From: Scyliorhinus canicula
Taxonomy: Eukaryota
Reading direction: 5' to 3'
Assembly: GCF_902713615.1 (NCBI RefSeq)
Contig: NC_052163.1
Span: forward strand, 37,334,248 to 37,398,247
Length of the DNA stretch: 64,000 nucleotides
Part shown: one piece after another, positions 591 to 52,634 of the stretch
How the letters are laid out: every line of letters begins with the position of its first letter
Numbering within the stretch: position 1 is the stretch's first letter
The notes under the pieces: model-generated
What the model saw: the letters and a program-made list of their open reading frames with translations, nothing else
Told to the model about the DNA's origin: nothing
Database searches by the model: none
Translations under genes and position numbers: made by a program

Positions 591-893
591 CTTTAACCTT
601 CAGTGTGATGGTTTGAATTCTGTGACCCGAAGTTGTTTCCACGTCGTACTGGTATGTTCCACCATCTGACAATTGTGTTTTCTGGATTATCAGTGAGATA
701 TCCAGTGAATTTGGGTGAAGTAATTTAATTCGACCTTGAGCTCCTCTGAAATGTGTGCTGCCGTTCAAGATTGTACTTCCATTTTTAGATATACGCAGTT
801 CCATCAAGTGAAGTGTGTTGATTTTGCATGGCAGTTCTGTGTCTCTATCAAATAGTCCTGTCACTGAATGGCTGCAATTTAAAGTTAGGAACT
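591..893 (-). CDS. Gene 1 IgV exon, B7-family (PD-L1/PD-L2-like) protein; downstream exons lie outside the window
   Basis: Acceptor ttttcag|AG at 894/893 and donor AAAG|gtggat at 591/590; 303 nt, phase 1-1. Translation (Q)FLTLNCSHSVTG..TELPC..RIKLL..DISLIIQKTQLSDGGTY..TITLKVK fits a V-set pattern and aligns with genes 2 and 3. Confidence 0.88.
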
Positions 894-945
894 CTGAAAA
901 ACAAACATATTCATTTCCTCCCATTATTGCCTCAGTGACAATCGC

Positions 946-1674
946 TGTTAAATCAACCACATATTCAGAAATACTTGGTACTTACGTGTTGCCAGGTATG
1001 TGCGTGTGGATAGGATGACACAAAGGAAAGTCACTGTGTGATAGAAACCCATCCCTGAAGGTAGTTCACCTGGGAAAATACAGAACCATTAAGTCTCAGG
1101 AATCTAATGAAACCTGCTGTTTTCACTATCTTAGGCATCACGTTAGCTTTTGTTTTAGGAAACTCGAAGAGCAAGGTAGAGCCGCATTAATAATTCCATT
1201 AAGGCACATTTGCATTACTAAAAAAAAAATGAATGCTCGTAATTATTTAATGTGCTTCAGGGGTAAAACAAAAACGAAACAATCAGTTTTTTAATGTTTT
1301 CCTACAGTTCCCACAGCCAGAACAGCAGAATCCACAAACTGATAACAGTTTACAAATGGACGGTGCAGCAATGTCCAATCTCGACAGGCTGTGTGGAATT
1401 TTGCATCAGCAACGGATTTTTGCCAAAATCAGTTCCCCGCAACGATTGACAGCTTTGCCGTGCAGTCGGACCGGGTACATTCCTCTATAACTGCTGTCCT
1501 ATCCTGGGATCTGGGTGGTCCGATTCTGGATGTTGGTCCGATCTCAGTGTTGTGATATCCCATCCGAATGGCTATCAATCGTTGAGCAAGTGCTGGCACA
1601 GCATTTCAAATGGGGGGGGGGGGGGGGGGGGGGCGTAAGTACCAAGTATTTCTGAATATGTGGTTGATTTAACA
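946..1674. repeat. Perfect 41-bp inverted repeat (946-986 and 1634-1674)
   Basis: tgttaaatcaaccacatattcagaaatacttggtacttacg at 946-986 is the exact reverse complement of 1634-1674; the right copy follows a 22-nt G run. Confidence 0.95.
986..1052 (-). CDS. Gene 1 start/signal-peptide exon (MGFYHTVTFLCVILSTRTYLAT)
   Basis: cttcag|GGATG acceptor, 67 coding nt, C|gtaagt donor, then a 92-nt intron to the IgV exon in the correct phase; hydrophobic leader homologous to the gene 2 leader. Confidence 0.85.
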
Positions 1675-2335
1675 ATGTGTTCTTTCAGACGGTCGGAGAC
1701 TCGATGGGCTGAATGGCCTCCTTCTGCACCGTCGGCATTCCATGAACTTCCTAGTTTCTCAACCGCTGCGTCCACTTACAGCCTGTGTGATCAGCAATCA
1801 GAAAGGACACGTTTAAATATCCCAAATGTATTTTCTAGTTTACCTTTGAGTTTAACAGCCTTTGAATGTTTGCAGTGAGTTATGTCGGCTTCTTGAGTGT
1901 AAGGGTTGAAACTGGGGGCATGCCGGAGGGTGACGCTGTTCGGGAGTGTTCGCCAGTGTCCTGAGATTAACCGCACTTCACTTAATGCTGAGGTCACCAT
2001 TCATATCCCAAACAATGTACATTTAACTGGGGCACAAATCTGTGTCTGTTTCTGGTAGAAGCACTGGTTCAGATTCCGATCTAATTACTTCTAATGGAGT
2101 CGCAGAGAATAATAAACTGTGTTGAAGGACCCGGTCCATTTTATTTTTAACAGCCCACTTTCCGCTTTTCTAGAGAGCGAGGCAGTCAGATTCCTGGCTG
2201 TTATTGTGTTATTGTGTCTCAATGCGGGAATACAGCAACAATTACATTTTACGTTTCAAATTCGTTGCCTGCTTTAATTTCTGCTAAATCAATCCTTCCT
2301 CCACCTTTACCTAAATTTACCAATTGTATACTCAC

Positions 2336-2590
2336 GAGTTTTAGATAAGAGTCGATTAAACTTTTCCCAAGTTTTCTGCAAGTCAAGACTGCACCTTTGG
2401 TTCCAAGCAAAATGCGGAGTTCCAACCTGCCCAGCGGTTCAAACTGCCCCAAGTTAAATCGGCCAGCTTGACAATTGCTGTCGGTGATTGCAGGGGTCTG
2501 GGTCTGCACAGTGAGACCCGGAGCTGGGGTTTGCGGCGGAGCGAGTCACAGCCTCTGGGCTCTGCATCCAGTCTGGAATAGTTATCAACC
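2336..2590 (-). other. Probable non-coding exon 1 / proximal promoter of gene 1
   Basis: Donor AACTC|gtgagt at 2336/2335. The sequence is homologous to 32710-32885 upstream of gene 2 (shared ttcaaac..ccaag, gacccgga..gctggg..ggagcgagtca, tccagtctgg). The 5' end is a guess. Confidence 0.45.
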
Positions 2591-2716
2591 AACGCCTGTC
2601 AGTTTATGTTGATAACAGTGAACATTGATCTGCAACTCCTCGATCCTCCACTAGTCCTCTCTGCCTGCCAATGATCAGCCAATACACTGACTCCTCCGTT
2701 TTTCTTCCCTTCTTAC

Positions 2717-4717
2717 AGGAAATGTATCAAAGAAAAAGAGAGATCCTATAAAGTGGCCAAAAGCACTGGGAAATCAGAAGATTGGGAAGGCTACAAAAAC
2801 AAACAGAGGTTAACAAAGAGACACATAAGGAAGGAGAGGATCAAATATGAAGGCAGGCTAGCCAGTAATATAAGAAATGATAGTAAAAGTTTCTTTCAAT
2901 ACAGTAGAAACAAACGACAGGCCAAAGTAGACATTGGGCCAATTCAAACTGATTCTGGAGGGCTAGTGATGGGAGACGAGGAAATGGCTGGAGAACTTAA
3001 TAAGTACTTTGCGTCTGTCTTCACAGTGGAAGACATGAGTAATATCCCAAAAATTATAAAGGGTCAGGGGGCTGAGTTGAGTATGGTTGCCATTACAAAA
3101 GAGATGGTGCTAAAAAAGCTAAAAGGTCTTAAAATTGACAAATCTCCTGGCCCCGATGGGCTACATCCTAGAGTTCTGAGGGAGGTGACTGAAGAAATAG
3201 GGGAAGCGTTGGTTGAGATCTTTCAAAAATCACTGGAGTCAGGGAAAGTCCCGGACGATTGGAAGATCGCTGTTGTAACCCCCTTGTTCAAGAAAGGATC
3301 AAGACAAAAGATGGAAAATTATAGGCTAATTAGCCTAACATCGGTTGTTGGTAAAATTCTAGAATCGATCGTTAAGGATGAGATTTCTAAATTCTTGGAA
3401 GAGCAGGGTCGGATTAGAACAAGTCAACATGGATTTAGTAAGGGGAGGTCGTGCCTGACGAACCTGTTAGAATTCTTTGAGGAGGTGACAAGTAGGTTAG
3501 ACCAGGGAAACCCAGTGGATGTGGTCTATCTGGATTTCCAAAAGGCCTTTGATAAGGTGCCACACAGGAGGCTGCTGAGTAAGGTGAGGGCCCATGGTGT
3601 TAGAGGTGAGCTACTGGCATGGGTTGAGGATTGGCTGTCTGACAGAAGGCAGAGAGTTGGGATAAAAGGTTCTTTTTCGGAATGGCAGCCGGTGACCAGC
3701 GGTGTCCCACAGGGTTCAGTGTTGGGGCCGCAGCTGTTCACCATATATATTAATGATCTGGATGAAGGGACTGGGGGCATTCTAGCGAAGTTTGCCGATG
3801 ATACAAAGTTAGGTGGTCAGGCAGGTAGTGCTGAGGAAGTGGGGAGGCTGCAGAAGGATCTAGACAGTTTGGGAGAGTGGTGCAGGAAATGGCTGATGCA
3901 ATTCAACGTGAGAAAATGTGAGGTCTTGCACTTTGGAAAAAAGAATCCAAGCATAGACTACTTTCTAAACGGTGAGAAAATTCATAATGCCAAAGTACAA
4001 AGGGATCTGGGAGTGCTAGTCGAGGATTCCCTAAAGGTAAACATGCAGGTTGAATCCGTGATTAAGAAAGCGAATGCAATGTTGTCATTTATCTCAAGAG
4101 GGTTGGAATATAAAAGCAGCGATGTGCTACTGAGCCTTTATAAGGCTCTGGTTAGGCCCCATTTGGAGTACTGTGTCCAGTTTTGGGCCCCACATCTCAG
4201 GAAGGACACTCTGGCACTGGAGCGTGTCCAGCGGAGATTCACACGGATGATCCCTGGAATGGCGGGTCTAACATATGAGGAACGGCTGAGGATCCTGGGA
4301 TTGTATTCATTGGAGTTTAGAAGGTTAAGGGGAGATCTAATAGAAACTTACAAGATAATACATGGTTTAGAAAGGGTGGACGCAAAGAAACTGTTTCCGT
4401 TAGGCGAGGAGACGAGGACCCGTGGGCACAGCCTTAGAATTAGAGGGGGTAAATTCAGAACAGAAATGTGGAGACATTTCTTCAGCCAGAGAGTGGTGGG
4501 CCTGTGGAATTCATTGCCGCGGAGTGCAGTGGAGGCCGGGACGCTAAATGGCTTCAAGGCAGAGATAGATAAATTCTTGATGTCGCGAGGAATTAAGGGC
4601 TACGGGGAGAATGCTGGTAAGTGGAGTTGAAATGCCCATCAGCCATGATTGAATGGCGGAGTGGACTCGATGGGCCGAATGGCCTTACTTCCACTCCTAT
4701 GTCTTATGGTCTTATGG
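2717..4717 (+). mobile_element. 5'-truncated CR1-type LINE with uninterrupted RT-half ORF (2753-4630)
   Basis: KSPGPDG, GVPQGSVLGP, FADD and RPHLEYC motifs; (cttatggt)n tail; TCTTAC on both flanks (2711-2716, 4718-4723). Confidence 0.95.
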
Positions 4718-5471: not shown

Positions 5472-8400
5472 TGATACACCATCAATAACACACAATGAGT
5501 GATGAACGTGACTGAGGCTTTAATACACTAAACAACAAGCCTCCTGCCTCTGGACTCGATCTGGGCCCAGAGGTGGAGACTTGCCACTTTTATACAGGAG
5601 CTCAAGGGGAGGAGCCACAGAAGGAGCCAGCCTGGATAAGCCCAGGCATGCACAATACAGTACAATACATATCATGCAATAACGTGCTTTACCACATTCA
5701 CCCCGTGTTTAAAAAAGAGTCCGCGGGGGTGAAGCGGTCTTAAAGGTCAAGTCTGTTGGAGGCCTTGACCTTCCCCCGTGATCGCCTCAGTCCCGGCTGT
5801 GCTGTGGGCGCCGGCATCAAGACCTGCGCATCCGGGAGCGTGTTGTCTTCTTCTTCACCCAGATGTTGAGTCGGCGAAGGTGCATGGGCGGAGGTGGTGG
5901 TGCTTGTCGCCGGTGGGCCTGCGGGTGTCAGTTCGTGAGGGAGATGGGCAGAGGTGGGGGAAGATGGTGTAGGGTGGAGGGTGGTGGTGATGGTCACCGG
6001 GGAGCCTGCAGGAGCCAAATCCCGATGGGAGACCATGTCCTGCCGCCCGTCCATGTAGGCATATTGGGGTTTGCATGGAGCAGCAGGACATTCTCGACGA
6101 TGGGGTTGGTTTTATGGCTCCTCGCATGCTTACGGAGAAAGATGGGCCCTGAGACTGTCAACTGGTTGTCCTGCTGGAGGTGATGCCTTTGCTGAGCAGG
6201 AACTGATGCAACTCATCGCTCATAAAGGAGGAGCCCCGATCACTGTGGATGTAGGTGGGGAATCCGAACAGGGTGAAAAGACTGTGCAGGGCCTTGATAA
6301 CAGAGGCTGAGGTCATGTCAGAGCAGGGGATAGCGAAGGGGAATCTGGAGTACTCGTCAACGATGTTGAGGAAGTACACGTTACGGTCAGTGGAGGGGAG
6401 GGGCCCTTTGAAGTCCCTGCTGAGGCGCTCGAAGGGGTGGGAGGCCTTTACCAGATGTGCTCTGTCTAGCCGATAGAAGTACGGTTTTCACTCCGCGCAG
6501 ACCTGGCAGTCCATGGTCACGGACCTGACCTCGATGGAGTAAGGCAGGTTGCGAGCCTTGATGAAGTGGAAATACTGGGTAGCCCCGGGTGACAGAGGTC
6601 ATTGTGGAGGGCCCGGAGTCGGTCTACTTGTGCACAGGCACATGTACCACGGGAGAGGGCTTCTGGGGGCTCATTGAGCTTCCTGGGTCGATACAAGATA
6701 TCATAGCTGTAGGTGGAGAGCTCGATCCTCCACCTCAGGATCCTGTCATTCTTGATCTTGCCCTGCTGTGTGTTATTAATTATGAAGGCAACCGACTGTT
6801 GGTCAGTGAGGAGAGTGAATCGCCTGCTGGCCAGATAATGGCTCCAATGTCTACGATGGCTTGGGCCTTCTTTTCGACGGCGGAGTGTTGAATTTCGGAG
6901 GCATATATGGTACGGGAGAAGAAAGCCACGGGCCTGCCCGCCTAGTTGAGTGTAGCAGCCAGAGCAAAGTCCTCCACTTCGCTCTCCACTTTAAATGGGA
7001 TGGACTCGTCCACAGTGTGCATCGTGGCTTTGGCAATGTCTGCTTTGATGGGTTTGAAGGCCAGTCGGGCCTCAGCCGTCAGGGGAAAAATGGTGGATTT
7101 GATCAGTGGACAGGCCTTGCCGCATAATTGGGGACCCACTGGGCATAGTAAGAGAAGAACCCCAGGCATCTCTTCAGGGCTTGGGGCAGTGGGCAACAGG
7201 GAGGTCCAGGGGGTGGCGCATGCGGTCGGGGTCGGGCCCAAGGACTCCGTGTTCCACGACGTAGCCGAGGATGGCCAGGCGGGTTGTGCGGAAAACATAT
7301 TTCTCTCTATTATAAGTTAGGTTCAGGAGTTTAGTGGTGTGGAAGAAGCACCGGAGGTTCTCATCATGGTCCTGCTGGTCACGGCCGCAGATGGTGATGT
7401 TGTCTAGGTATGGGAACGTGGCCCGCAGCTCGTACTGGTTAACCATTCGGTCAATTTCTCTTTGGAAGACCGAGACCCCGTTGGTGACGCCGAAGGGAAC
7501 CCTGAGGAAGTGATAGAGGCAGTCGCCTGCCTCAAAGTCAGTGTATTGGCTGTCCTCTGGGCGGATAGGGAGCTGGTGATACGCAGACTTCAAGTCGACT
7601 GCAGAGAAGACTTGATATTGCGCAATCTGATTGACCATGTCAGATATGTGGGGGAGGGGGTACGCATCGAGCTGCATGTACCGGTTGATAGTCTGGCTAT
7701 AATCAATGACCATCCGGTGCTTCTCTCCAGTCTTGACGACCACCACTTGGGCTCTCCAGGGGCTGTTACTAGCCTCAATGATTCCCTCTCGCAGGAGTCG
7801 CTGGACCTCCGACCTGATGAAGGCCCTGTCCTGGGCACTGTAGCGTCTTCTTCTAGTAGCGATGGGCTTACAGTCCGGGGTGAGGTTTGCGAAGGGGGAG
7901 GGTGGGGCGACCTTAAGGGTTGCGAGGCTACAGACGGTGAGGGGGAGCAGGGGTCCGATGAACTTTAAGGTAAGGCTCTGGAGATGGCACTGGAAGTCGA
8001 GACCCAGTAATAGAGCAGCGCAGAGATGGGGAAGGACGTAGAGTTTAAAGTTGGTGTACTCTACGCCTTGTACAGTGAGGGTCGCGACACAGTACCCCCG
8101 GATTTCTACTGCGTGGGATCCGGAAGCCAGGGAGATTTTCTGGGTCGCGGGTAGGATGTGGAGCGAGCAGTGCCTTACCGTATCTGGGTGTATGAAGCTG
8201 TCTGTGCTCCCAGAGTTGAAAAGGCAGGCCGCCTCGTGCCCGTTGATCTGGACGGTCATCATTGACTTCGCGAGGTGGTGCTGCCATGACTGGTCGAGTG
8301 TGACGGAGGCGAGTGTCGGAAGGCGGTCGGTAGGCCGGTCGGAGGTAGCAGCGCCAGCGTACGATCGGGTGAGCAGGGCCCCCGGCAGGCTGCTGAGTGG

Positions 8401-9537
8401 TCCCAAGATGGCGGACCGCGTGGGTCGCAAGCGTTGGCCAAAATTAAAGATGGCGGCGCCCACGGGTCACAGATGGCCGGGTGGCGCAGCAGTTGGGGGG
8501 TGGCCCCGACAGGCAGCGCTGCTGGGCCTAGAAGATTTAGGGGAAGAGCCGACCTGGCAGGCTTTTGCAAAATGGCCCTTCTTCCCACAGCCGTTGCAAG
8601 TTGCGTTCCGTGGCAGGCAGCGTTGTCGGGATGATTACTCTGGCCGCAGAAGTAGCACTTCGGGCTTCCAGTGTTGGTGGGCCACTGTACGGCGCAGGCT
8701 TGCGTTGCACCTGGGTCGGTTGATGGCTGCGCCCACGAGGGTGCCGCACGGTCGGAGGTGTAGGCCCCCATGTCTGGGAGGCCACCTCCAGCGAGCTGGA
8801 GAGTTGTACTGTCTCTGAGAGGCCGAGTGTCCCCTCTTCTAATAGTCGCTGGCGGATATAGTCAGAGTTCATGCCTGTGACACAAGCGTCCCTGATCAGC
8901 AGCTCCACATGCTGGGTAGCCGATATCGCCCGACAGTTGCAGTTCTGGCCGAGGATGCATAGGGCATGCAGGAATTCTGTGAGTGATTCCCCAGGGCGTT
9001 GCCGTCTCGGAGGCAAGGAGGTGTCTGGCATATACCTGGTTAGCGGATTTCACATATTGTCCTTTTAGCAGCGTTATCACTTCCACGTACGAGGGGGCGT
9101 TCCTAATGAGGGGAAAGACCCTTGGGCTCACCCGTGCGTGGAGGACCTACTACTTCTGGAGGTCTGTGAGGTCTTCGTTGAAGGATGCGAGGAACACCTC
9201 GAAGCAGCTTAGCCAGTGTTCAAAAGTCTCTGTAGCGTCGGCTGCTTGTGGGTCCAATTCCAAGCGATCAGGCTTGAGTGATGAGTTCACCTTGAGGAGT
9301 TTAGTGGATTAAATTGATACCATCAATAACACACGACGAGTGATGAACGTGACTGAGGCTTTGATACACTAAACAGCAAGCCTCCTGCCTCTGGACCCGA
9401 ACTGGGTCCGGAGGCGGAGACTTGCCACTTTTATACAGAAGTCCGAGGGCAGGAGCCACAGGTGGAGCCAGCCTGGACAAGCCCAGGCATGCACAATACA
9501 GTACAATACATACTATGCAATAGCATGGTTTACCACA
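5472..9537 (-). mobile_element. Ty3/Gypsy LTR retrotransposon, about 4.1 kb, degenerate
   Basis: LTRs at 5472-5696 and 9315-9537 (TG..CA on the minus strand, about 22 mismatches over about 223 nt by hand count); CCTTG target duplication on both sides; gag, protease, RT (PWRAQVVV, PFGV, YLDN), RNase H and integrase (HSDRG) order, with frameshifts. Confidence 0.95.
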
Positions 9538-16438: not shown

Positions 16439-17906
16439 AAGGTATGTTGCCTCCCGGGTGCCAGGGCCAGGGATGTCTCGGATCGTGTCTTCAGGATTCT
16501 GAAGGGGGAGGGTGAGCAGCCAGAAGTTGGGTGCACATTGGTACTAACGATGTAGGTAGGAAAAGGGGTGTGGTGGTAATAAACAAGTTTAGGAGTTAGG
16601 CTGGAAGTTAAAGACCAGGACAGACAGAGTTGTCATCTCTGGTTTGTTGCCGGTGCCACGTGATAGCGAGGCTAGGAATGGGGAGAGAGTGCAGTTGAAC
16701 ACATGGCTGCAGGAATGGTGTAGCAGGGAGGGCTTCAGGTATTTGGATAATTGGAGCGCATTCTGGGGAAGGTGGGACCTGTACAAGCAGGACGGGTTGC
16801 ATCTGAACCGGAGGGGCACCAATATCCTGGGAGGGAGGTTTTCTAGTACTCTTCAGGAGGGTTTAAACTAATTTGACAGGGGAATGGGAACAGGATTTGT
16901 AGTCCAGCAACTAAGGAAGCTGATATTCAGGCCGCCAAAGCATGTAGTGACGCAGTGGGGAAGGTAACACTGACAAAGGAGAGTACTTGCAGGCAAGGAG
17001 ATGGGTTGAAGTGCGTATATTTCAACGCAAGAAGCATCAGGAATAAGGTGGGTGAACTTAAGGCATGGATCGGTACTTGGGACTACGATGTGGTGGCCAT
17101 CACGGAAACCTGGATGGAAGAGGGGCAGAAATGGTTGTTGGAGGTCCCTGGTTATAGATGTTTCAACAAAATTAGGGAGGATGGTAAAAGAGGTGGGGGG
17201 TGGCATTGTTAATTAGAGATAGTATAACAGCTGCAGAAAGGCAGTTCGAGGAGGATCTGCCGACTGAGGTAGTATGGGTTGAAGTCAGAAATAGGAAAGG
17301 AGCAGTCACCTTGTTGGGAGTTTTCTATAGGCCCTCTAATAGCAGCAGAGATGTTGAGGAACAGATTGGGAAACAGATTTTGGAAAGGTGCAGAAGTCAC
17401 AGGGTAGTAGTCATGGGTGACTTCAACTTCCCAAACATTGAGTGGAAACTCTTTAGATCAAATAGTTTGGATGGGGTAGTGTTTGTGCAGTGTGTCCAGA
17501 AAGCTTTTCTAACACAGTATGTAGATTGTCCGACCGGGGGGAGGCCATATTGGATTTAGTACTTGGTAATGAACCGGGGCAGGTGATAGATTTGTTAGTG
17601 GGGGAGCATTTTGGAGGTAGTGACCACAATTCTGTGACTTTCACTTTAGTAATGGAGAGAGATAGATGCGTGCAACAGGGTAAGGTTTACAATTGGGGGA
17701 AGGGTAAATACAATGCTGTCAGACAGGAATTGAATTGCATAAGTTGGGAACATAGGCTGTCAGGGAAGGATACAAGTGAAATGTGGAACTTGTTCAAGGA
17801 ACAGGTACTACGTGTCTTTGATATGTATGTCCCTGTCAGGCAGGGAAGAGATGGTCAAGTGAGGGAACCGTGATTGACAAGAGAGGTTGAATGTCTTGTT
17901 AAGAGG

Positions 17907-26524: not shown

Positions 26525-26710
26525 GGGGCTGGTTTAGCTCACTCGGCTAAATTGCTGGCTTTTAAAGCAGACCAAGCAGGCCAGCAACACGGTTCGATTC
26601 CCGTACCAGCCTCCCCCGACAGGCAACGGAAAGTGGCGACTAGGGGCTTTTCACAGTAACTTCATTGAAACCTACAGTAAGCGATTTTCATTTCATTTTT
26701 TTTCATTTCA
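26525..26710 (+). mobile_element. Short tRNA-derived SINE
   Basis: ggggctggtttagctcac..ggttcgattccc head and (ttcat)n tail. Confidence 0.8.
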
Positions 26711-27448
26711 TAGTCAATCAACATATTGGAGAATTAAATGTTTCATTTTAATTACATTAAACCGATTTACAATTCATCACGTGGAAATATAATTGCATAA
26801 TTTTTTGCAACAGGAAATACTCTTGCTACTTCAGTTTTCTCATGTAGTTGCATGCAATGGTATTTTCTCTCCTGGGTGAAAAATACAGTCCAGCACACAA
26901 GCCCTTTCACAATATTTCTGTAATCAACCTGCAGGAAGCACATTTTCAAAGTACGAAAGAGTCTCTAAGATCTTATTCTCCTTTTACAGAGTGCCGTGGA
27001 AGTCACAAACAAATCCAGGTGTAAAATAGGGATATCCTTGAAAAACGGCCAGGATTGAGACCAAGCTCTCTAGTTTGTGGCGTTCTTATGTTTTGTGGAT
27101 CAATTGATTTATGAATGGTGTTAGTATACAACCAGTATGTGGCATTGGTTTTCTGTCGACGAAAACAAATAGTGAAGAGTCCACAAAGTGGCAGAGGCAG
27201 AATTACTTTTCATAACAGTCCCCTAAAGATAGTTGGAGATCCTGGAAAGCAAACCAACAGTGCTTGAAATAATTTGTCTGATGTAAATTCACCTTCCACT
27301 ATTCAGACGATACAGAAGGACATGGCTGGGATGTGATGTATGTTTGAAGCATCATATCGCAAAAACGTTCTTAAAGTAATCCATATTAATGCATTCATCG
27401 CATGCAGAAATAAGACGTATTCACTGCAATCATTATTAAATGTCAGCA

Positions 27449-27465
27449 TCATGTGAGCTTGACAT
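27449..27465 (-). CDS. Gene 2 candidate terminal coding exon (D)VKLT-stop; 3'UTR possibly to about 26455
   Basis: Very strong acceptor t10ccttttaacag|AT; phase-1 reading gives DVKLT*, similar to VQLR* in gene 3; minus-strand AATAAA at 26476-26481. Confidence 0.5.
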
Positions 27466-28804
27466 CTGTTAAAAGGAAAAAAAAAATTATTAAACCAGTG
27501 AGACAGAAAGCTTCCAAAAATTAATTAGATGTTTGAAATCGCACCTACCATTGGCATTGCCGACTGTCTTCTAGCTGTTGAAAGTAAAACAAAAGAAAAA
27601 ATAATTAATTTATTTTTTCTTGTACGAAATAGTTCGTTATTTGTTGGGAGTTCCACAACTCCGAGTCATATATATGAAAAACAGCAATCTCTGTACAATT
27701 GTGATCATTTTTACAGTCATGAACAATGCTCACATTTTCCTTAATTAACTTTTAAACAACTTCTCCGACTTACTTGTCCAGTGCTAAAAAAAAATGATCT
27801 TACAAGAAATAATAACTGCAGTCACCTATCCGCCTTACAATTTTCCTTCTTCCAACTTGACTTAGTGATTATGTAGTGGTTATGTTAACAAACTATTAAT
27901 TCAAAAAGTTAGCCAATTCTAGTAATCCCAAGGACAGGTATTTAAATCCTAATATCACAGTGCAAAACCTTGAATTCAATTTTAAAAATAATGCTTGGTA
28001 TTGGTAAAAGGTGACCGTGAAGCTTCAGTCAATATTAGACCATGTCACAAAAACCCAAAGGGTTCACGAATCTCTTTTTTTCAAAGGAATCCTATAATTC
28101 TTACTGTGCCAACCTTATATGTGTCTCAAGTCCTACACAAATGTGCTTCATTCTTAACTAGCCTCTGAATTGGTCCAGCAGGTCAGTCAATTATATCAGG
28201 CTACAAAGAAGAATACTTTTAGGGCCTGTTCTGTGCTGTACTGTTCTATGTTCTATGTTCTAAATGTTGATCACACCTCGAGCATGATGGTTTTGAAGTT
28301 GACTTTCCTGCATGGTGAATGTTTCCTTACTTCCCCGACCTGATTGTTTTTTCCCCATATTAAACACTACAACTTGTGATTTGAAATACTGTCGATGACT
28401 CAGTCCTACACCTATCTCTTCCAATTCTGTTCAATGGTTGGCTCTGGCTCAATAGAAGGTGCTCCAGAACTATTCAGTCTGACTCATCTAAAGTTTTCTT
28501 ACATTCTCTAGCTAGAAGCTGGGTAGCAGCAGAAGATGGCTTATAATGGCACATTATCAGCCAATTTTACACCTAACTACTTCAACCAACTACGATGTAA
28601 GGAAATCTGAAGATTATAACCAATTAGGGAAAATTCAAAGCATTAACTTATTTTTATTAATTAAACAAATATTCGGCGAATGTGTTCATGCTCAGTAAGG
28701 TCACAGTACTGGACATCCAATGATTCAGCTGCGATGAATGTAGGAAATGGTTATATATATTGTATGATGTGTTGGTTGCAGTAAGGTTATTAAAATAACT
28801 TAGA

Positions 28805-28987
28805 ATGAATGAAATGAAAATTGTTTATTGTCACAAGTAGGCTTCAATGAAGTTACTGTGAAAATCCCCTAGTTGCCACATTCCAGTGCCTGTTCGGGGA
28901 GGCTGTTACAGGAATTGAACCATGCTGCTGGCCTGCCATGGTCTGCTTTCAAAGCCAGCGATTGAGCCCAGTGTGTTAAACAGCCCC
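28805..28987 (-). mobile_element. Short tRNA-derived SINE
   Basis: Same family as 26525-26710, in reverse orientation. Confidence 0.8.
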
Positions 28988-29759
28988 AGTTTAGGTTGAG
29001 GTATCCAGATTATAAATCTGTTAAACTATGATTAAGAGTTTACAGCTAGGCAGCCTGGGATATCACTCATGGGAGACGCTGGATCTGTTTGAGTTTCATT
29101 TTCAGCCCTGCCCTGTGTCTGTTATCTTTAGTTTAATTTGTAGAGCTCTGCTCTGGATTCTGAGGAAAGAAACTGTGTTTCTCGGACTGACTTCTGAAAG
29201 CTTCTCTCCAAAGGACTTTGTGTAAATCTGTAAGCCACTAAGTGTTAACTTTATTAAAAAGTAGCATTTGACCTGTGTGTGTAGATTTTGTTGAACTGAA
29301 ATTGTGGATGTATACTCAAGGACCTTTCTTTTTTATAGAACTTTTTAACTGTTAGTTGAAAATCGTTTTTCCCCCTGTATGTTAATGGAGTTAATCCTGT
29401 GTTATTAATAGTGTCAGTGGAATCCTTTCCTCACAATTTACAAATTGAAAAGTTGTTGGGGTCCAGTTACCTAATATAAATTGGGGTTTGGTCCAGGTAC
29501 TGGAACACTAGCTAAGAACCTATCTATATACACAAATCTGGGACGTGAACAAGAATGCCAGATAGAATTCGAAGACATCGAGAGTGCTTGAGATCCCGTT
29601 CCCTTTTTCTTGGCCAGACAATGTGGATAAACCAAGTTATCAGGTTTCCAGATTATGGGGTGTATTCAGAAACAAAAATCAAGCAAAAGTTATTTTTCAA
29701 TAAGATGATCTTGGAATTTATGTTTTAAGAAACCAGAAGCTTTAACAAAATCACCACAC

Positions 29760-29906
29760 CTGCACGTGCATTTCTCCTGAATCGAAGAATCGCTAAGATG
29801 ACTATTCCAATTGCAAGTGCGCCAACAATGATGAAGATAGCTGTGAGAACCTTAGTCTTTTTCTCTTCACTTTGGCGATCAGTATTAGGTTCGTCCAAGA
29901 AGGGAA
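29760..29906 (-). CDS. Gene 2 stalk/transmembrane exon
   Basis: tttcag|TT acceptor, G|gtgtgg donor, 147 nt, phase 1-1; VLTAIFIIVGALAIGIVILAIL followed by the basic RFRRNAR. Confidence 0.85.
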
Positions 29907-30139
29907 CTGAAAGGTTGGGTAGAAAAACATAATTAATTGTAATTTCCAACTTCAACCTTTGAATGTATGATAATGCTGATATTAATCATATAGAGATATG
30001 CTGAAGTTTGAACTGCACAGAGTAAAATGATTGCAGCAGTTTAAAAGGAGGCCCCACAACCTTCTCAAGAAAACCAGCTGTGGGTAAAAAATAGGATTTT
30101 GTGGCATTGCACACATCTTCCAATATAAGATAAAACTAC

Positions 30140-30238
30140 TACTAATAATTAATCATCTTTATTGCCACAGTAGGCTTACATTGCAAGGAAGTTAATGTGA
30201 AAAGCCCCTAGTTGTCACATTCCTGTGCCTGTTCAGGT
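30140..30238 (-). mobile_element. SINE 3' tail fragment carrying AATAAA
   Basis: ctaggggcttttcaca..gtaagcctac..aataaagatgatt matches the tails of the SINEs at 23341 and 26525. Confidence 0.75.
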
Positions 30239-30309
30239 CTTTAAAATCAGTGATTTAAACAATTATTTAAATTTTCTGAGATTGTTTTGAATAAATGGTG
30301 TGGACTTAC

Positions 30310-30606
30310 TTGGAAAATGCTTCTTAATCTCATATTTAGGCTCTTCCACGTTCCTCACAACACATGTGTAGTTGCCATCCAAAGCATTTTCTGCAACTGT
30401 GATTGGAAGTATACTGGTCATCTTGAACAGTCCCTGTTGGGTCTCTACGCTACTAGTTTTGGCGTGAGAGGTGAGGTCCGTTTTCTCATAGACAAACCAG
30501 TGAATCTCAGCGAGAGGATACCCAGTTGTTTCACAAATCAGGTCCGTTGTTCTCATTCTTCTGGTGATGTTTGATGCCAAACTCACTTTTGGCAAACTGT
30601 ACGGAG
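30310..30606 (-). CDS. Gene 2 IgC exon, PD-L1/PD-L2-like
   Basis: tttag|CT acceptor, A|gtaagt donor, 297 nt; APYSLP..LICETTGYPLAEIHW..QGLFKMTSIL..NYTCVVRN. Confidence 0.92.
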
Positions 30607-31310
30607 CTAAACATAAATTACATCCTTATTAACGTAATGGGAGAGGTGTAGAATAACATAGGCGCAGTTTTTATACTTAGCCCGCCAGCAAGCAATACAC
30701 AACACTAATTCCCAGATTTATGACAGTCATTGCGTTGAATTTCGGTTACTTAAAGTAAGGAAAGTGTAGGGGTGAAGAAAATATTCAGTGGTTCAAATTT
30801 GTGATTTTGATCTAATTTCTGAATATGTGAATTCAATACTGTTCAGGGGACTTCAGATTGTGCTTTCCCCTTTATTGTGATCATTTTTGTCTGATTGAGA
30901 AAGTAGCTTATATGGATGGCTTGCATATTTTGTCACAATATATCTGTATCTGTTTCATAATGGATTATTGTCATGGGTGCTAGTTATTGAGATTGATTAC
31001 ATAGTAAGTATTGGCTGGACGTCAAATGATGATTATCCTGTCTTACAATGTGGTCATCCAAAACATCAGTACATCCTCTCCTAACTTCAGTGGCCGAAAT
31101 ATGTTTTGAGATATCCTGAAGAGATTAAAAGTGTTCTACAAATGCAAAGTCATTATTTGTTCTCTCAACATGACCCTCATTATAACTTACTGTTTGCCTA
31201 GCTCACATGTCAAGCTTTTAGATGTGAGAATGAAATTGGCATTTATTGCCAAGTGAAGGCAACCAATAATTTACCAGGGAGAATATCAGGAAAATAATAC
31301 TCGTGCCCAC

Positions 31311-31637
31311 CTTTAACCTTCAGTGCGATGATTTTACTGGCATAACCAGCCGTTGTTGCCACAAAATATTTATAGATCCCTTGATCTGTCAGTTGTGTGT
31401 TCTGGATCAACAATGATACATCTTGTGAATCTGGATGAAGGAATTTAATTCGATTTTGAGGTACTTCCTTATCAGCTTCGAACCTAAATAAGGATGTTAC
31501 GTTTTCATTTTTTTCCACTTTACTGAGTTCAATAAAACTAAATGTTTTCTCTTTTGTTGATTTGATTGAGCAGGGCAGTTTAGTGTCTTCATTCAATATT
31601 CCTGTCACTGAAACCTCACAATCTAATGTCACAAAGC
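31311..31637 (-). CDS. Gene 2 IgV exon
   Basis: ttttcag|GC acceptor, AAAG|gtgggc donor, 327 nt; TLDCEVSVTG..TKLPC..DVSLLIQNTQLTDQGIY..IALKVK. Confidence 0.9.
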
Positions 31638-31731
31638 CTGAAAAACAAGAATTTCCATTAGCTCACATTACCTCAGTTATAATCGGTGTTCGATGGGCTA
31701 GAAATTGAGTAGCACTTAGTACAGTACTTAC

Positions 31732-31798
31732 TTTGTGCAAAGGATGCACTTCTGCACAAGACAACATAAAGGAAAATTGTTGTACTGTGTAAACCCAT
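31732..31798 (-). CDS. Gene 2 start/signal-peptide exon (MGLHSTTIFLYVVLCRSASFAQ)
   Basis: ttccag|GAATG acceptor, 67 coding nt, A|gtaagt donor, 94-nt intron to the IgV exon. Confidence 0.87.
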
Positions 31799-31857
31799 TC
31801 CTGGAATTCAGGTTACCTGCTAATTTGAAGACAAAGAAAAAATTAATCAAAAATACA

Positions 31858-46282: not shown

Positions 46283-46283
46283 T

Positions 46284-47671: not shown

Positions 47672-47779
47672 CTACATCAATAAAAAATGTATTTCCTGAC
47701 TGATATTCAATGACTTTGGTTGGAATAACCTTTCCATCATCAAGATTGACTATTTCAACCTACTTGTGTCATTGTTTCA

Positions 47780-48290: not shown

Positions 48291-49032
48291 AATTGTTTTG
48301 GTGCTGAGGAAAAGTGATAGTACTTTCTCATGGGGAGAAAGCTGGACTAAACTCAGCTATGACCATCCTATTTTCATATGGGCTGACCATAATGTTCAGA
48401 CATATGGGTAAGGAGTGATCACGTTGACAGGTATAGAGCGTGGTGCAATTTTACACAAGAGGAAGATTTTAACAGGTGGTGGGGTTTGCTGTCCCCCACC
48501 TGAAGAGTTAGTAGGAATGCATCATTACTGATGCCGGCTGCCCCTCAGTCTTTTACCCAGTGTTAATTGGCTTGAGGTGTGGTACCACCCGACTCTCAGG
48601 TGGAAGTCTTGGGTCAGAGAGTTGTTGGCCAGTCTAATTGCAGGTGACGCCGTAGGCAGTCCCTTAAGCTAAGCCTTGAAGCCAGGATACAGGTAAGTAT
48701 TGGGGTTATTAGGCCAGAACAGAAAGGGAGGTCCTTGGAGGATTGGGAGGATTTGTTGGTGAGGAAAGGGGGGGGGAGGGGAGAGAAGGTGGACCTTGGG
48801 TGGGGAGAGCCCAATGATAAACGTGGATCGGAGAGACCAACCGGGTAATGTCGCGGTACCCAGCTTTCTACCTTCAGGGGGCAGTTAGATTCTCCTCCAT
48901 GAGTCAGAGTGGTTGGGAGGGGGTGGTGGGGGAGGGGGACTTAATGCAGCATTGGAGAAGGGAAACAAAATCTTGGAAAGGTCTTCAGCAAAAACAGTCC
49001 TGCCTTTGCCTTTATCAGAACTAATATTGTAC

Positions 49033-49185
49033 CTCGAGGGATTTGATGGCTCCAGTCAAAGAGCAACGTAATTGCCAGAAGAGTAAAAATGATCATGATG
49101 AAGCCCAGAGATAAATAAACACCAGGAGTTCTTCTTTTTTGTTTTGATAACTGAACATTCTTTTCAGTTTTAGAACAGTCCAATT
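49033..49185 (-). CDS. Gene 3 stalk/transmembrane exon
   Basis: tttcag|AA acceptor, G|gtacaa donor (weak), 153 nt, phase 1-1; hydrophobic GVYLSLGFIMIIFTLLAITLLF. Confidence 0.7.
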
Positions 49186-50886
49186 CTGAAATGACAAAGA
49201 CATAATTGCCATGTTTAATTACAGTTTATATCATGTACTCCTCAAGCTTTAATTAAAACATCTTTTATGGAAAACAGAATGGAGCAGATTATATTAATTC
49301 ATGAGATCACATGGTCATGGGTGAAGTGAATCAGGTAGTAGCGACAGCTACTTCTGCACAAGAAATTCCTTTGGAAGATTAGCCCTTGCTCTTGGCCACA
49401 TTATCAGTGGCACTCAATGAAAATGACTTATTCATATTCATTTAGGATTCGGGAATCAGGAAAAATTTGACAATGTGTCAACTGCAGAACAAGTGGAGTC
49501 GAGGGCTTGCTGGCTGGTGTACAATGAGCAGCAGAAACGATGTAACAATTTAAATAAGATCTCAGATTTTACGAAGTGCTTGTAATCTAAAACATTCAAT
49601 ACTACCCATATCTTAATACAAAATGGAAACAAAAATGCATATTGTGCACAAGTATGTTCCTAGGGGTTTACCCTCCAGCCATTAACTTCCATTCAGAGCA
49701 GCCTTGCTTGTCCACAAAAGGCCGGACCGGGCCTGCCATTTTCCTGGCATTACTGCGGAGTTTCTCATCTTTGTAAGGCTCAGTGCTGGACTTCACATTC
49801 TCCGGCATCCAGCGAGACAGCTTGCCATCTGGAATGACTGAGAAATTCATGACTGTGACCTTGATACATCAGCCCTTGCAACAGCTTCAGAACTACCAAG
49901 AAACACCTCTGAGGGTTGCTAACATCAAAACAAAACTACACCTTTCCTTAGCCTAACAGATGACGGTAGAATTTTCGGATGAGCGTTTTCACTAAAATAT
50001 CAATATTATTAATAATAAAATGGTGTTCCTTTTTAGGGCAGTATTAAAGTTTGAAGCAATATTGGGCCTAACTGCAAGGAAATGTAAGTCAGTTTGAGTT
50101 TTGTGGAGCCAATGGAAATTTAATTTGGGTGCATGGCAAAGAATTACATTCTGGGATTGCATTTGGCTTTATTCACAGAATCTCCTCTGAGGGGATTTTT
50201 GAGTTATTTAGGGAGAGTGTTGTTTGAATTTTGTATTGCTCATGGTGAAAGTTGCTGGGGTTTGGGAATACTTTCTCCAGACAGTATCAAAGTGGGAAGT
50301 CCCAGGTTAAATACCAAAGAGTTTTGTTCCAAACAATATGCTTTCAGTTCTATCTCAAATAAATGCCTTAACTTAAAACTCAGGAGTTCATTCCTTACAG
50401 TACTGGCTTGTTTCCATTTTCCCAGTTGCAGCTAATCTTATATCTAACTTAAAAAATACAGCAAACACTAATTTAAAGAGATAAGTAGATATTGTGACAT
50501 TTCTGACCTGCTTCCAATCAACAGCAAAACAAATAACTTTAATTTATCTTAACATTAGCATTTTCTTAATTTAGATTAGCCATGAAATTTCCTCAAGATG
50601 TAGCTGTCTGCCTCAAAGGGAAAAATAATGTTAAAGAAAGCTCCACTTTATGTGTTAAATGGAATAATGCTTTTGTCCTTATCTAACGCCGCCATCTGGC
50701 ATGGCTGAGAAATTCACGGGTTGCAATCACTGTCACTTTTCAGGATCAGAGATCAAAAACTCACTTTAGCTTTTCCCTTCAGGCTTCATTCAGATTAACA
50801 GCCTATCACGTTAGCCCATTTGGATAAATATGTTTTGCACTATACCCATAAATTTTATTGTATGTGAGCTCAAGGGCCAGCGTCAC

Positions 50887-50928
50887 TTGCAGAAATATTT
50901 CCCTCAGTCCTGATGTTTCTTCCTGCAT
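50887..50928 (-). CDS. Gene 3 candidate 42-nt stalk mini-exon (N)AGRNIRTEGNISA
   Basis: Strong polypyrimidine tract ttttttccccccgtacttttcgttgtgcagtacag; symmetric phase 1-1 with donor A|gtgacg; contains an N-glycosylation sequon (NIS). Confidence 0.45.
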
Positions 50929-51003
50929 CTGTACTGCACAACGAAAAGTACGGGGGGAAAAAAACCTTACATTTCAAGCTGAAGTAAATAAATCAAAACT
51001 CAC

Positions 51004-51258
51004 TTGCAGATTTGCATGCATTTTCAATGCATACAGAGCAAATATAGTTTATGGAACACAATTCGCCAACGACTGAAAGGTGAGTGGTGAGGTTGTACAA
51101 TTTATCTTCTCTTCGTAAACTGCTGTAATTAGCAGTCAAATTGATTCCATTTTCAATCTGCCACTGAAGTTTTGCCAAGGGATATCCAAGTGTAGTACAA
51201 GAAAGTCCTTTTTCATCACCTCGGTCACTTTTGGTCACTTGCGGCACAGTATATGGAG
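51004..51258 (-). CDS. Gene 3 IgC exon, PD-L1/PD-L2-like
   Basis: ttttcag|CT acceptor, A|gtgagt donor, 255 nt; APYTVP..LSCTTLGYPLAKLQW..RREDKLYNLTTHL..NYICSV. Confidence 0.9.
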
Positions 51259-51694
51259 CTGAAAAGCATGTTTTTCAAGTTTAATGTTGCAACTCAGTGA
51301 TGTAGAGCTGGATTAAATAAGATCAACACCAATCTTTCCAGTAGCATCACAAACACTCGTTTCCCAATATTTCAATACAGACCTCATTGGCCCACGCTCA
51401 CTGCATCATCCACGTCAGAAGCCTCATTATTTGCCCAAATAAACAGAAGGGGCAGAGTAAAATGCTGATTTTAGATGACTAACTTCAGTGTCAATTTCCC
51501 TTCCCTAATAAAAACAGTGACTACTGTTGAGGCATGATGATATGTGTGCCAACACATCTCGAGCACCTAAGCCAAGGTAAAGTTTTTATTCATGAATCAT
51601 GAAAAGAAGTGATGACATGATCGTCAATAACTGGGACCTTAAAACCAAGTTAATCACAAGCACACCTAATGTCTACTCATGCATACTTTCAGAA

Positions 51695-52038
51695 GGGCAG
51701 CACGGTGGCACAGTGGTTAGCTCTGATGCCTCATAGCACCAGGGTCCCAGGTTCAATTCTGGCCTTGGGTTATTGCTTGTGTGGAGTTTGTATTTTCACC
51801 CCGTGTCTGCGTTGGTTTCCTCCAGATGCTCCGGTTTCCTCCCACTGTCCAAAGTAGTGCAGGTTAGGTGGATTGGCCATGCTAAATTGCCCTTATTGTC
51901 CAAAAGGTTAGGTGGGTTACTGGGTTACGGGGATAGGGTGGAGGTGTAAGCTTAAATAGGGTGCTCTTTCCAAGGGCTGATGCAGACTTGATGGGCCGAA
52001 TGTCCTCCTTCTGCACTGTAAATTCTATGATTCTATGA
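51695..52038 (+). mobile_element. tRNA-derived SINE in gene 3 IgV-IgC intron
   Basis: gggcagcacggtggcacagtggttagc head; ttctatg tail. Confidence 0.85.
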
Positions 52039-52310
52039 AGGGACCATTTGACAAACGTTAGGAACAGGAACTCTGGCTGAAAATACACATCCAACTCTGG
52101 AAGTGCATGATTATCAATGATAAATAATCACAAAGGATTTGACCTGCCTTAGGATTGTGAGAGTGTACTTACAAAGAAAAGACCAATATTATAAATAGCT
52201 TCTTTACTGATGTAATTATATTAGTTTTCATCTTCAATGTCAGATCTGAAACATTGTAATCTCGTGTACTGTTCTGTTGACAAAGAAGAGAAGAGATTTT
52301 CTTTACCTAC

Positions 52311-52634
52311 CTTCAACCAAAAGGTTTATTTTCGCTTTTTTATAGCCACCTCGTCCACAGTCTAGCAAAATATGATATTTGCCTTCATCCGAAATTTCTG
52401 TTTCCTCAATTATCAATAAGGTAGTGTTTAAATCTGTAGAACATCGTCTTTGTTTCCAAGCATTAGCTTTTTTCTCTGTACATAGGTTTTCTATCTGGTT
52501 AGAATGCACTGCCTGGTAGGACCAGTTGCTATGACATTTTTGCCCTGGTTGTGATTCGTACTCACAAACCAAAACAGTGCGGTGATTATGTATTCCTGTG
52601 ACTGAACTCTCACACTGCATTGTTGTAAATGGTT
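52311..52634 (-). CDS. Gene 3 IgV exon (Cys-rich)
   Basis: ttttttcag|AA acceptor, GAAG|gtaggt donor, 324 nt; TMQCESSVTG..TVLVC..NW..LLIIEETEISDEGKY..KINLLVE. Confidence 0.88.

What the first reader, a model, noticed from the sequence alone, without database searches (positions are those of the whole stretch)
591..52634. All three V domains lack the canonical B-F disulfide and share a new A-strand Cys (C-x15-C)
Seen: the D-x-G-x-Y-x-C motif reads DGGTYQY, DQGIYKY and DEGKYHI, so the F-strand Cys is gone in all three paralogs. The B-strand Cys is kept, and an extra Cys sits exactly 16 residues upstream in each (LNC..LPC, LDC..LPC, MQC..LVC). Genes 1 and 2 also lack the C-strand Trp. Established: the B-F disulfide and Trp form the V-set core, including in mammalian PD-L1/PD-L2. 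Inference: the extra Cys falls near IMGT position 6, which packs against Cys23, so an A-B disulfide may replace B-F. Conservation across divergent paralogs argues for selection rather than decay, and this could define an undescribed V-domain subtype.
Basis: partly seen in the sequence, partly recalled or inferred. Interest (0 to 1): 0.8.

Follow-up and report, generated by a model that had tools for sequence, protein, structure and literature searches.

The report
Shark B7 genes with rewired V-domain cysteines
Three neighbouring catshark immune-ligand genes (B7 family, closest to CD276/B7-H3) lack the usual core disulfide of their outer antibody-like domain. They keep an unusual nearby cysteine pair that is conserved in sharks, rays, many bony fishes and the coelacanth, and that probably forms a replacement bond.

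Summary
Three minus-strand IgV exons (591-893, 31311-31637, 52311-52634) read YxY, YxY and YxI where V domains have YxC. All three carry C-x15-C, and genes 1 and 2 also lack the C-strand Trp.

These are real genes. Each has a leader exon with a GTAAGT donor and phase-1 introns. Gene 2 equals the NCBI model "CD276 antigen [Scyliorhinus canicula]" and is spliced as predicted in transcript-type contigs from four studies.

They are not PD-L1 orthologues, because catshark PD-L1 is a different, canonical gene. Sequence profile and predicted fold are closest to CD276/B7-H3.

The A-strand Cys is not new to these paralogues. It and the B-strand Cys are invariant across a family spanning sharks, rays, bichir, sturgeon, gar, bowfin, teleosts and coelacanth. 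About a quarter of the family domains still keep Trp and the F-strand Cys.

No domain lacks both possible partners of the B-strand Cys. Strand boundaries in two AlphaFold models and the inward/outward residue pattern place the two Cys directly opposite each other, facing the core. An A-B intrasheet disulfide is therefore likely (about 0.6) but unproven, because no coordinates were available and no Cys-Cys distance was measured.

I found no paper describing the pattern. The scan noted the same pattern in the adjoining window.

The parts
986..1052 (-). Gene 1 leader (signal-peptide) exon, coding part
   Evidence: ATG plus a hydrophobic core, then a phase-1 C|GTAAGT donor, 92 bp upstream of the V exon.
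591..893 (-). Gene 1 IgV exon. A-Cys codon 874-876, B-Cys codon 826-828, Tyr at the F-strand Cys position 646-648. The rest of the gene lies beyond the window start.
   Evidence: Pfam V-set 29.5 bits, cut-off 26. Orthologues in Carcharodon and Cetorhinus.
31732..31821 (-). Gene 2 first exon (5'UTR plus leader; coding part 31732-31798)
   Evidence: Transcript-type contigs cover 31731-31821 and join it to the V exon.
31311..31637 (-). Gene 2 IgV exon. A-Cys codon 31618-31620, B-Cys codon 31570-31572, Tyr at the F-strand Cys position 31366-31368.
   Evidence: Pfam V-set 47 bits. Splice joints 31636|31731 and 30606|31311 seen in four runs.
30310..30606 (-). Gene 2 IgC exon (B7-type, canonical Cys pair and Trp)
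   Evidence: Pfam Ig_3 and C2-set_3. Best PDB sequence match is the CD276 IgC. Splice joints.
29760..29906 (-). Gene 2 stalk and transmembrane exon
   Evidence: Hydrophobic 22-residue segment. Contig joints 29906|30310 and 27465..29760.
27549..27574 (-). Gene 2 26-nt cytoplasmic microexon
   Evidence: 26 extra letters in the contigs between 27465 and 29760. AG/GT-flanked and encodes the ARRQSA stretch of P0159.
26646..27465 (-). Gene 2 last exon (end of the cytoplasmic tail plus 3'UTR; the 3' end is approximate)
   Evidence: Contig pieces 26646-27465 in runs X2 and X6. Acceptor at 27465.
52716..52788 (-). Gene 3 leader exon, coding part
   Evidence: ATG plus a hydrophobic core, then a phase-1 A|GTAAGT donor.
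52311..52634 (-). Gene 3 IgV exon. A-Cys codon 52612-52614, B-Cys codon 52564-52566, Ile at the F-strand Cys position 52369-52371, and four further Cys.
   Evidence: Below the Pfam V-set cut-off, but the AlphaFold2 model has mean pLDDT 91.4 with V-type strand order. Orthologue in Heptranchias.
51004..51258 (-). Gene 3 IgC exon
   Evidence: Weak Pfam C2-set_3 and C2-set_2 hits.
49033..49185 (-). Gene 3 stalk and transmembrane exon (the stalk carries a Cys)
   Evidence: Hydrophobic segment with AG/GT boundaries. Splicing was not checked with reads.

Best explanation
The window holds three tandem, functional type-I membrane genes (leader, IgV, IgC, TM, short tail). They belong to a CD276/B7-H3-like branch of the B7 ligand family that is found in cartilaginous fishes, ray-finned fishes and the coelacanth. 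The hallmark of this branch is a Cys in strand A, 16 residues before the canonical strand-B Cys. In the elasmobranch clade the strand-F Cys has been replaced by Tyr, Phe or Ile, and in the gene 1/2 type the strand-C Trp has been replaced by Leu. I infer that the strand-B Cys now bonds with the strand-A Cys. This would form a cross-strand (intrasheet) disulfide that staples the N-terminal strand to strand B, instead of the usual B-F bond between the two sheets. The proteins presumably act as cell-surface ligands for an unidentified IgSF receptor. Shown here: gene structure, expression of gene 2, family membership, and conservation of the Cys pair. Inferred: the bond itself. Unknown: the receptor.
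For: Gene models: canonical phase-1 exons and leader exons. The translation of gene 2 is identical to NCBI protein P0159. Four transcript-type contig sets from four studies splice leader, V, C, TM, microexon and last exon exactly as predicted.

Family: the profile search finds homologues in at least 15 elasmobranch species and in bichir, sturgeon, gar, bowfin, eel, milkfish, Hoplias, Umbra and coelacanth.

Conservation: across 29 ectodomains the only invariant V-domain columns are the A-Cys, the B-Cys, G/Y of DxGxY, and one Gly. Across 24 V domains only four columns are invariant, two of them these Cys. The Cys tally is 54 domains with A+B and no F, 21 with A+B+F, 6 outsiders with F only, and none lacking both A and F. 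V1 and V2 have exactly two Cys and V3 has six, so all are even numbers.

Geometry: the AlphaFold2 models (pLDDT 87.3 and 91.4) give strand A 3-7 with strand B ending at 27, and strand A 4-7 with strand B ending at 26. Both fit the register i+j=30, which puts Cys7 opposite Cys23. Residues alternate hydrophobic and polar so that 3, 5, 7 and 21, 23, 25 face the same side. This matches antibody VH, where buried residue 6 lies against Cys22 (own knowledge: Honegger and Plueckthun 2001).

Closest family: the profile scores 97-102 bits per domain against CD276, 89 against PD-L1, 81 against BTN1A1 and 68 against CD80. The Foldseek top PDB hit is B7-H3, and the top four Swiss-Prot hits are CD276.
Against: No coordinates were returned, so no S-S or C-beta distance was measured.

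Direct cross-strand neighbours can form a disulfide only at non-hydrogen-bonded rungs, which I could not determine.

In 21 family domains the canonical F-Cys and Trp coexist with the A-Cys. There the A-Cys has some role other than being the sole partner of the B-Cys. It may be a free buried thiol, and the same could hold in sharks.

Five elasmobranch V domains have three Cys and one has seven, so even counts are not universal.

The profile used to collect homologues contained both Cys, which slightly favours sequences that have them.
Confidence: 0.6

Rival explanations
1. The two Cys are neighbours but stay reduced. Both are buried, conserved packing residues, and the V domain has no disulfide at all, like CD2/SLAM-family V domains.
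For: V domains can fold without a disulfide (CD2/SLAM family; own knowledge). In 21 three-Cys relatives the A-Cys probably coexists with an intact B-F bond and would then be a free buried thiol. No distance could be measured.
Against: A lone buried Cys normally drifts to Ala, Val or Leu. Here both Cys are invariant in 54 F-less domains over several hundred million years, while neighbouring core positions vary. Two adjacent thiols in the ER would be expected to oxidise.
Confidence: 0.2
2. The A-strand Cys makes an intermolecular disulfide, either a covalent homodimer or a link to a partner chain. The B-strand Cys is merely a relic.
For: Three-Cys relatives have an odd Cys count in the V domain. 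Nav beta2/beta4 use a spare Ig-domain Cys for an intersubunit bond (PMC4036194).
Against: Residue periodicity puts the A-Cys on the core-facing side of strand A, not the solvent side. The invariance of the B-Cys after loss of its F partner would be unexplained.
Confidence: 0.08
3. The genes are PD-L1/PD-L2 orthologues or co-orthologues with a degenerate V domain.
For: NCBI's automatic names for several orthologues are 'programmed cell death 1 ligand 1/2-like'. An APY motif at the V-C junction and a Phe at the mature N terminus resemble PD-L1.
Against: Catshark PD-L1 is a separate gene, XP_038660173, with canonical C..W..YRC (PMC12151841 supplement), and that paper reports a single PD-L gene in fish. 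The family profile and fold searches rank CD276 above PD-L1. B7-H3 shares the APYS motif.
Confidence: 0.04
4. The exons are decaying pseudogene copies in which loss of the canonical Cys and Trp reflects relaxed constraint.
For: V3 falls below the Pfam V-set threshold. The region is rich in retroelements.
Against: The reading frames are open and the splice sites canonical in all exons seen. Gene 2 mRNA is found in four studies. Orthologues of all three types are conserved across sharks and rays. The fold predictions are confident.
Confidence: 0.02

Closest known systems
CD276 / B7-H3 (tetrapods)
   Same: Leader-IgV-IgC-TM architecture. The APYS motif at the V-C junction and the GYP..W IgC motif are shared. 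It is the best profile match (97-102 bits per domain) and the best Foldseek match in PDB and Swiss-Prot. NCBI names gene 2 'CD276 antigen'.
   Different: Human and mouse B7-H3 have Pro at the A-Cys position (LEVQVP; the offset was checked) and keep the canonical B-F Cys and Trp. Orthology is unproven. The bony-fish relatives sit next to a JUPITER-domain gene, which is not a neighbour of human CD276 (own knowledge).
PD-L1 / PD-L2
   Same: B7-family V-C fold (TM about 0.78), a Phe at the mature N terminus, and an APY-type junction.
   Different: Catshark has a separate canonical PD-L1. Profile score is lower than for CD276. By eye the PD-1-contact Asp122 is not kept, but I did not align this formally.
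Siglec V-set domains (own knowledge: sialoadhesin structure, May et al. 1998)
   Same: A V-set domain in which the inter-sheet B-F disulfide is replaced by an intrasheet disulfide involving strand B.
   Different: In Siglecs the partner is in strand E, with an additional interdomain bond. Here the candidate partner is in strand A, and V1 and V2 have no E-strand Cys.
Nav channel beta3 (and beta1) Ig domain, Cys2-Cys24 bond (PMC4036194)
   Same: A disulfide that tethers the N-terminal segment to the strand-B region of a V-type Ig domain.
   Different: In beta3 the bond is a surface bond to a Cys three residues after the canonical one, and it is additional to the canonical Cys21-Cys96. Here the canonical B Cys itself would be used and the B-F bond is absent.
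CD2/SLAM-family V domains; CD4 domain 2 (own knowledge)
   Same: These are Ig domains without the canonical inter-sheet bond. CD4 D2 has a cross-strand bond within one sheet.
   Different: CD2/SLAM V domains lack both Cys and pair with a C2 domain of another type. The CD4 D2 bond joins strands C and F.

Membership tests
B7 ligand family | Type-I membrane protein with leader, IgV, IgC and TM on separate phase-1 exons | tested here: met
   Splicing of gene 2 is confirmed by contigs.
B7 ligand family | B7/butyrophilin-type membrane-proximal IgC domain | tested here: met
   Pfam C2-set_3 at 27.4 bits (cut-off 27) and Ig_3 for C2; C3 scores below the cut-offs. PDB sequence hits are CD276 and PD-L1/L2.
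B7 ligand family | Two-domain fold superposable on solved B7 ectodomains | tested here: met
   Foldseek E about 1e-14 and TM 0.73-0.84 to B7-H3, PD-L1, B7-H6, ICOS-L and BTN.
Canonical V-set Ig domain | Cys(B)-Cys(F) disulfide with Trp in strand C | tested here: not met
   The F position is Y, Y and I. Trp is absent in V1 and V2 and present in V3.
Canonical V-set Ig domain | Match to Pfam PF07686 above the gathering score, or a V-type strand order | tested here: met
   V1 scores 29.5 and V2 47 bits against a cut-off of 26. V3 scores 13.7 bits, but its model has A, A', B, C, C', D, E, F and G strands at pLDDT 91.
PD-L1/PD-L2 | Orthology to the single fish PD-L gene | tested here: not met
   Catshark PD-L1 is XP_038660173, a different canonical protein. 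The family profile ranks CD276 first.
PD-L1/PD-L2 | Conserved PD-1 contact residues F19 and D122 | tested here: inconclusive
   A Phe is present at the mature N terminus. The Asp is not evident when the G strands are lined up by eye. No formal alignment to PD-L1 was made.
CD276 / B7-H3 | Closest sequence and fold relative among named B7 members | tested here: met
CD276 / B7-H3 | Orthology shown by conserved synteny or phylogeny with tetrapod CD276 | not tested
   No tetrapod CD276 sequences could be fetched. The window holds no flanking marker genes. The bony-fish relatives neighbour a JUPITER-domain gene.
Fish CD276-like subfamily with A-strand Cys (defined here) | C-x14/15-C joining strand A to the canonical strand-B Cys, DxGxY, and a B7-type IgC | tested here: met
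   All three window genes and every aligned homologue carry it.
Siglec-type V-set | Intrasheet B-E disulfide | tested here: not met
   V1 and V2 contain only the A and B Cys.

The most novel reading that the evidence does not exclude
The A, B and F cysteines form a three-Cys cluster in the V-domain core of the ancestral protein, still present in gar, bowfin, sturgeon, bichir and eel. That cluster allows the strand-B Cys to swap partners, either as a redox-switchable (allosteric) disulfide or as a stepping stone that let lineages discard the Cys-Cys-Trp pin altogether. The subfamily would be the missing ligand set for the orphan CD28-family receptors (CD28HL1, CD28HL2, CD28X) that sharks and fishes have and humans lack (PMC11599192).
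Probability: 0.15. Interest if true: 0.8.

Novelty: new variant of a known kind. Interest (0 to 1): 0.55.

Why it matters
The Cys-Cys-Trp pin is the most conserved feature of immunoglobulin domains. A large, old and expressed branch of the B7 checkpoint-ligand family keeps a different Cys pair and has lost the pin in some lineages. How many times that happened is unresolved. If the A-B bond is confirmed, the branch would be a natural example of how an Ig core can be rewired. It would also give a sequence signature (C-x15-C, DxGxY without Cys, B7-type IgC) that separates these genes from the CD276, PD-L and butyrophilin labels that automatic annotation now gives them. Finally, it defines a set of orphan ligands to test against the orphan CD28-family receptors of sharks and fishes. 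For mammalian immunology it bears indirectly on B7-H3, whose receptor is still unknown.

Tried and rejected
1. Measuring the Cys-Cys distance. Structure prediction returns only pLDDT and DSSP, and no coordinate file appears in /data, so the register was inferred from strand limits.

2. Counting independent losses of the F-Cys. The V-C tree gives a minimum of 2 changes. The AU test does not reject all F-less sequences lying on one side of a branch (p 0.55), and the V-only tree is weakly resolved. The number of losses is therefore unresolved. Synteny hints at separate events but does not prove them: F-less Chanos and F-Cys Amia both lie next to a JUPITER-domain gene.

3. dN/dS against S. torazame.

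4. Fetching tetrapod CD276 or more bony-fish members. Word-based searches with P0137 and with the IgC region returned only close relatives.

5. Protein Atlas look-alikes. These gave only generic Ig clusters.

6. Literature. Five searches and one for zgc:174863 found no description of the pattern. Flajnik 2012 is not held. I did not look up Hansen 2009 or Quiniou 2024 (Immunogenetics), and the searches did not return them. Prior mention in an alignment figure therefore cannot be excluded.

7. JUPITER gene in the window. tblastx found none.

8. Expression of gene 3. Transcript-type runs hold only 0.15-0.22 of its sampled words, and the single read-laying run was already spent, so its splicing is unverified.

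9. Pseudogene and PD-L readings were rejected (see the rival explanations).
Full report
**Observation.** Each lies in an open exon bounded by a polypyrimidine-AG acceptor and a G|GT donor, both in phase 1, as is typical of Ig-superfamily exons. The V exons are 591-893, 31311-31637 and 52311-52634. In each, a Cys sits exactly 16 residues before the strand-B Cys. The codons are 874-876/826-828, 31618-31620/31570-31572 and 52612-52614/52564-52566. The position of the strand-F Cys is Tyr, Tyr and Ile. V1 and V2 have no strand-C Trp, with Leu in that column, while V3 keeps it. V3 also has four further Cys.

**These are genes, and at least one is expressed.**
- About 80-95 bp upstream of each V exon there is a short exon. 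It has an ATG, a hydrophobic core and a phase-1 GTAAGT donor.
- Genes 2 and 3 have a B7-type IgC exon 0.7-1 kb downstream and a stalk/TM exon further on.
- The rest of gene 1 lies beyond the window start.
- The spliced translation of gene 2 is identical to the first 279 residues of P0159, NCBI's 'CD276 antigen [Scyliorhinus canicula]'. The start of the remaining 18 residues maps to the 26-nt microexon, and the RNA-supported last exon follows.
- Fourteen runs from six studies hold about a third of the sampled words of 29700-31800, which is the exon share.
- Contigs of four runs from four studies join 31731|31636, 31311|30606, 30310|29906 and 29760|27465, with the 26-nt microexon between the last two.
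- For gene 3, transcript-type runs hold 0.15-0.22 of the words. I could not lay them.

**What family.**
- Pfam calls V1 and V2 V-set, and C2 Ig_3/C2-set_3.
- The C2 exon matches the CD276 IgC best in the PDB, then PD-L1/L2.
- A profile of 29 family ectodomains scores 97-102 bits per domain on CD276, 89 on PD-L1, 81 on BTN1A1 and 68 on CD80.
- The AlphaFold2 model of the gene 2 ectodomain (pLDDT 87.3) superposes on B7-H3, PD-L1, B7-H6, ICOS-L and butyrophilins. Its four best Swiss-Prot matches are CD276 of mouse, rat, human and Xenopus.
- The genes are not PD-L1 orthologues. Kondo et al. 2025 (PMC12151841) list catshark PD-L1 as XP_038660173, a protein with the canonical C..W..YRC pattern, and report a single PD-L gene in fish.

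The window genes are therefore B7-family members closest to CD276. Whether they are orthologous to tetrapod CD276 is open.

**The cysteine pair is much older than these paralogues.**
- A profile search of 1.84 billion representatives, cluster look-ups and a word-based search recover homologues in many species. These include catsharks, Mustelus, Carcharodon, Cetorhinus, Heterodontus, Chiloscyllium, Stegostoma, Rhincodon, Pristiophorus, Heptranchias, stingrays, a skate and a sawfish.
- The same searches recover bichir, sturgeons, gar, bowfin, eels, milkfish (zgc:174863), Hoplias, Umbra and coelacanth.
- NCBI's automatic names for them vary between CD276, PD-L1-like, PD-L2-like and butyrophilin-like.
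- In the 29-sequence ectodomain alignment the only invariant V-domain columns are the A-Cys, the B-Cys, G and Y of DxGxY, and one Gly.
- In a 24-sequence V-domain alignment only four columns are invariant, and two are these Cys.
- Of the 81 full-length domain hits tallied (near-identical cluster members included), 54 have A+B without the F-Cys. Another 21, all from bony fishes, have A+B plus Trp and the F-Cys. The 6 non-family domains have the F-Cys only. None lacks both possible partners of the B-Cys.
- Outside the family, Cys at B-16 occurs in 3 of 186 Ig domains.
- Human B7-H3 has Pro at that position (offset checked).

**Evolution.**
- A V-C tree separates an elasmobranch clade (support 100/99) from the bony-fish sequences.
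- Within the elasmobranchs, a gene-3 type that contains both shark and ray sequences splits from a gene-1/2 type.
- All elasmobranch members lack the F-Cys, so that loss predates the shark-ray split.
- The number of losses overall is unresolved. The minimum is two changes on the free tree, but a single change is not rejected (p 0.55).
- The F-less milkfish gene and the F-Cys bowfin gene both lie just downstream of a JUPITER-domain gene. This fits either an orthologous locus with a separate loss or a tandem pair.

**Is there an A-B disulfide?** The tools gave no coordinates, so I could not measure the distance. The indirect evidence is as follows.
- (a) In the gene 2 model, strand A is 3-7 and strand B ends at 27. 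In the independent V3 model (pLDDT 91.4), strand A is 4-7 and strand B ends at 26. Both fit an antiparallel register i+j=30, which places Cys7 directly opposite Cys23.
- (b) Family-wide residue statistics alternate hydrophobic and polar so that 3, 5, 7 and 21, 23, 25 face one side. Under that register, inward residues pair with inward residues.
- (c) The spacing and pattern equal antibody VH, where buried residue 6 packs against Cys22 (own knowledge).
- (d) Both Cys stay invariant in every lineage that has lost the F-Cys. That is hard to explain for an unpaired buried Cys.
- (e) Cys counts are even in the three window domains. The four extra Cys of V3 fall where two further bonds are plausible: the start of strand C with the end of strand F, and C' with D.

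Three points weigh against it. Cross-strand bonds need a non-hydrogen-bonded rung, which I could not check. The three-Cys relatives show that the A-Cys can exist beside an intact canonical pair. A few elasmobranch domains have odd Cys counts. I put the bond at about 0.6.

**Comparison with known cases.** All four precedents below differ in the strands involved or in keeping the canonical bond.
- Siglec V-set domains replace B-F by an intrasheet B-E bond (own knowledge).
- Nav beta3 tethers its N-terminal segment by a surface Cys2-Cys24 bond, in addition to the canonical Cys21-Cys96 (PMC4036194).
- CD2/SLAM V domains have no disulfide (own knowledge).
- CD4 D2 has a C-F cross-strand bond (own knowledge).

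I found no paper describing the pattern. Flajnik 2012 is not held, and I did not look up Hansen 2009 or Quiniou 2024 (Immunogenetics). Quiniou et al. 2024 (PMC11599192) describe CD28-family receptors (CD28HL1, CD28HL2, CD28X) that are present in sharks and fishes, absent in human, and without known ligands. A link to this subfamily is only a hypothesis.

**Verdict.** The claims that the Cys is new and that the genes are PD-L-type are wrong. The finding is a previously unremarked variant of a known kind: an old CD276-like B7 subfamily with a rewired V-domain cysteine pattern. The scan noted the same pattern in the neighbouring window (s1-278574).

Noticed in passing
window 31501: A G>T difference (minus-strand AAC>AAA, Asn68Lys in gene 2) is present in the contigs of all four runs laid. 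It removes the NVT N-glycosylation sequon in the C'-region of the V domain. It is probably a polymorphism of the reference individual.
   Followed up: partly
window 27549-27574: Gene 2 has a 26-nt AG/GT-flanked microexon in its cytoplasmic tail. It is present in all four transcript contigs.
   Followed up: yes
window 49033-49185, 51004-51258, 52311-52634: Gene 3 is unusually Cys-rich. It has six Cys in the V domain, five in the IgC and one in the stalk just outside the membrane, which could make an interchain bond. The V and stalk Cys are conserved in the Heptranchias orthologue.
   Followed up: partly
window 946-981 (-) and 1639-1674 (+): The same 12-residue translation (VPSISEYVVDLT) appears on both strands. 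This is an inverted copy of the sequence just upstream of the gene 1 V exon, as another scan note (s1-253790) also reports.
   Followed up: no
window 2675-4627 (+), 6161-8466 (-), 16877-17209 (+): There are long retroelement ORFs between genes 1 and 2: a 651-aa reverse-transcriptase-like ORF, integrase/protease-like ORFs, and a LINE endonuclease-like ORF. They probably account for the strong G-over-C skew at 16-24 kb.
   Followed up: no
L001:2178-6069 and L002:1-2957: In milkfish and bowfin, the homologous B7-like gene lies 4-7 kb downstream of a JUPITER-domain (JPT/HN1-like) gene on the same strand. No such gene is detectable in the window.
   Followed up: partly
P0002, P0013, P0024, P0001, P0003 (homologues, not in the window): Some family members have other architectures. 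These are V-V-TM or V-TM without an IgC in elasmobranchs, and predicted proteins with five to seven V domains in eel and Hoplias, which may be fused tandem genes.
   Followed up: no
adjoining window (scan notes s1-278574, s1-278513): The cluster continues beyond the window start, with the rest of gene 1 and at least one more paralogue showing the same Cys pattern.
   Followed up: no
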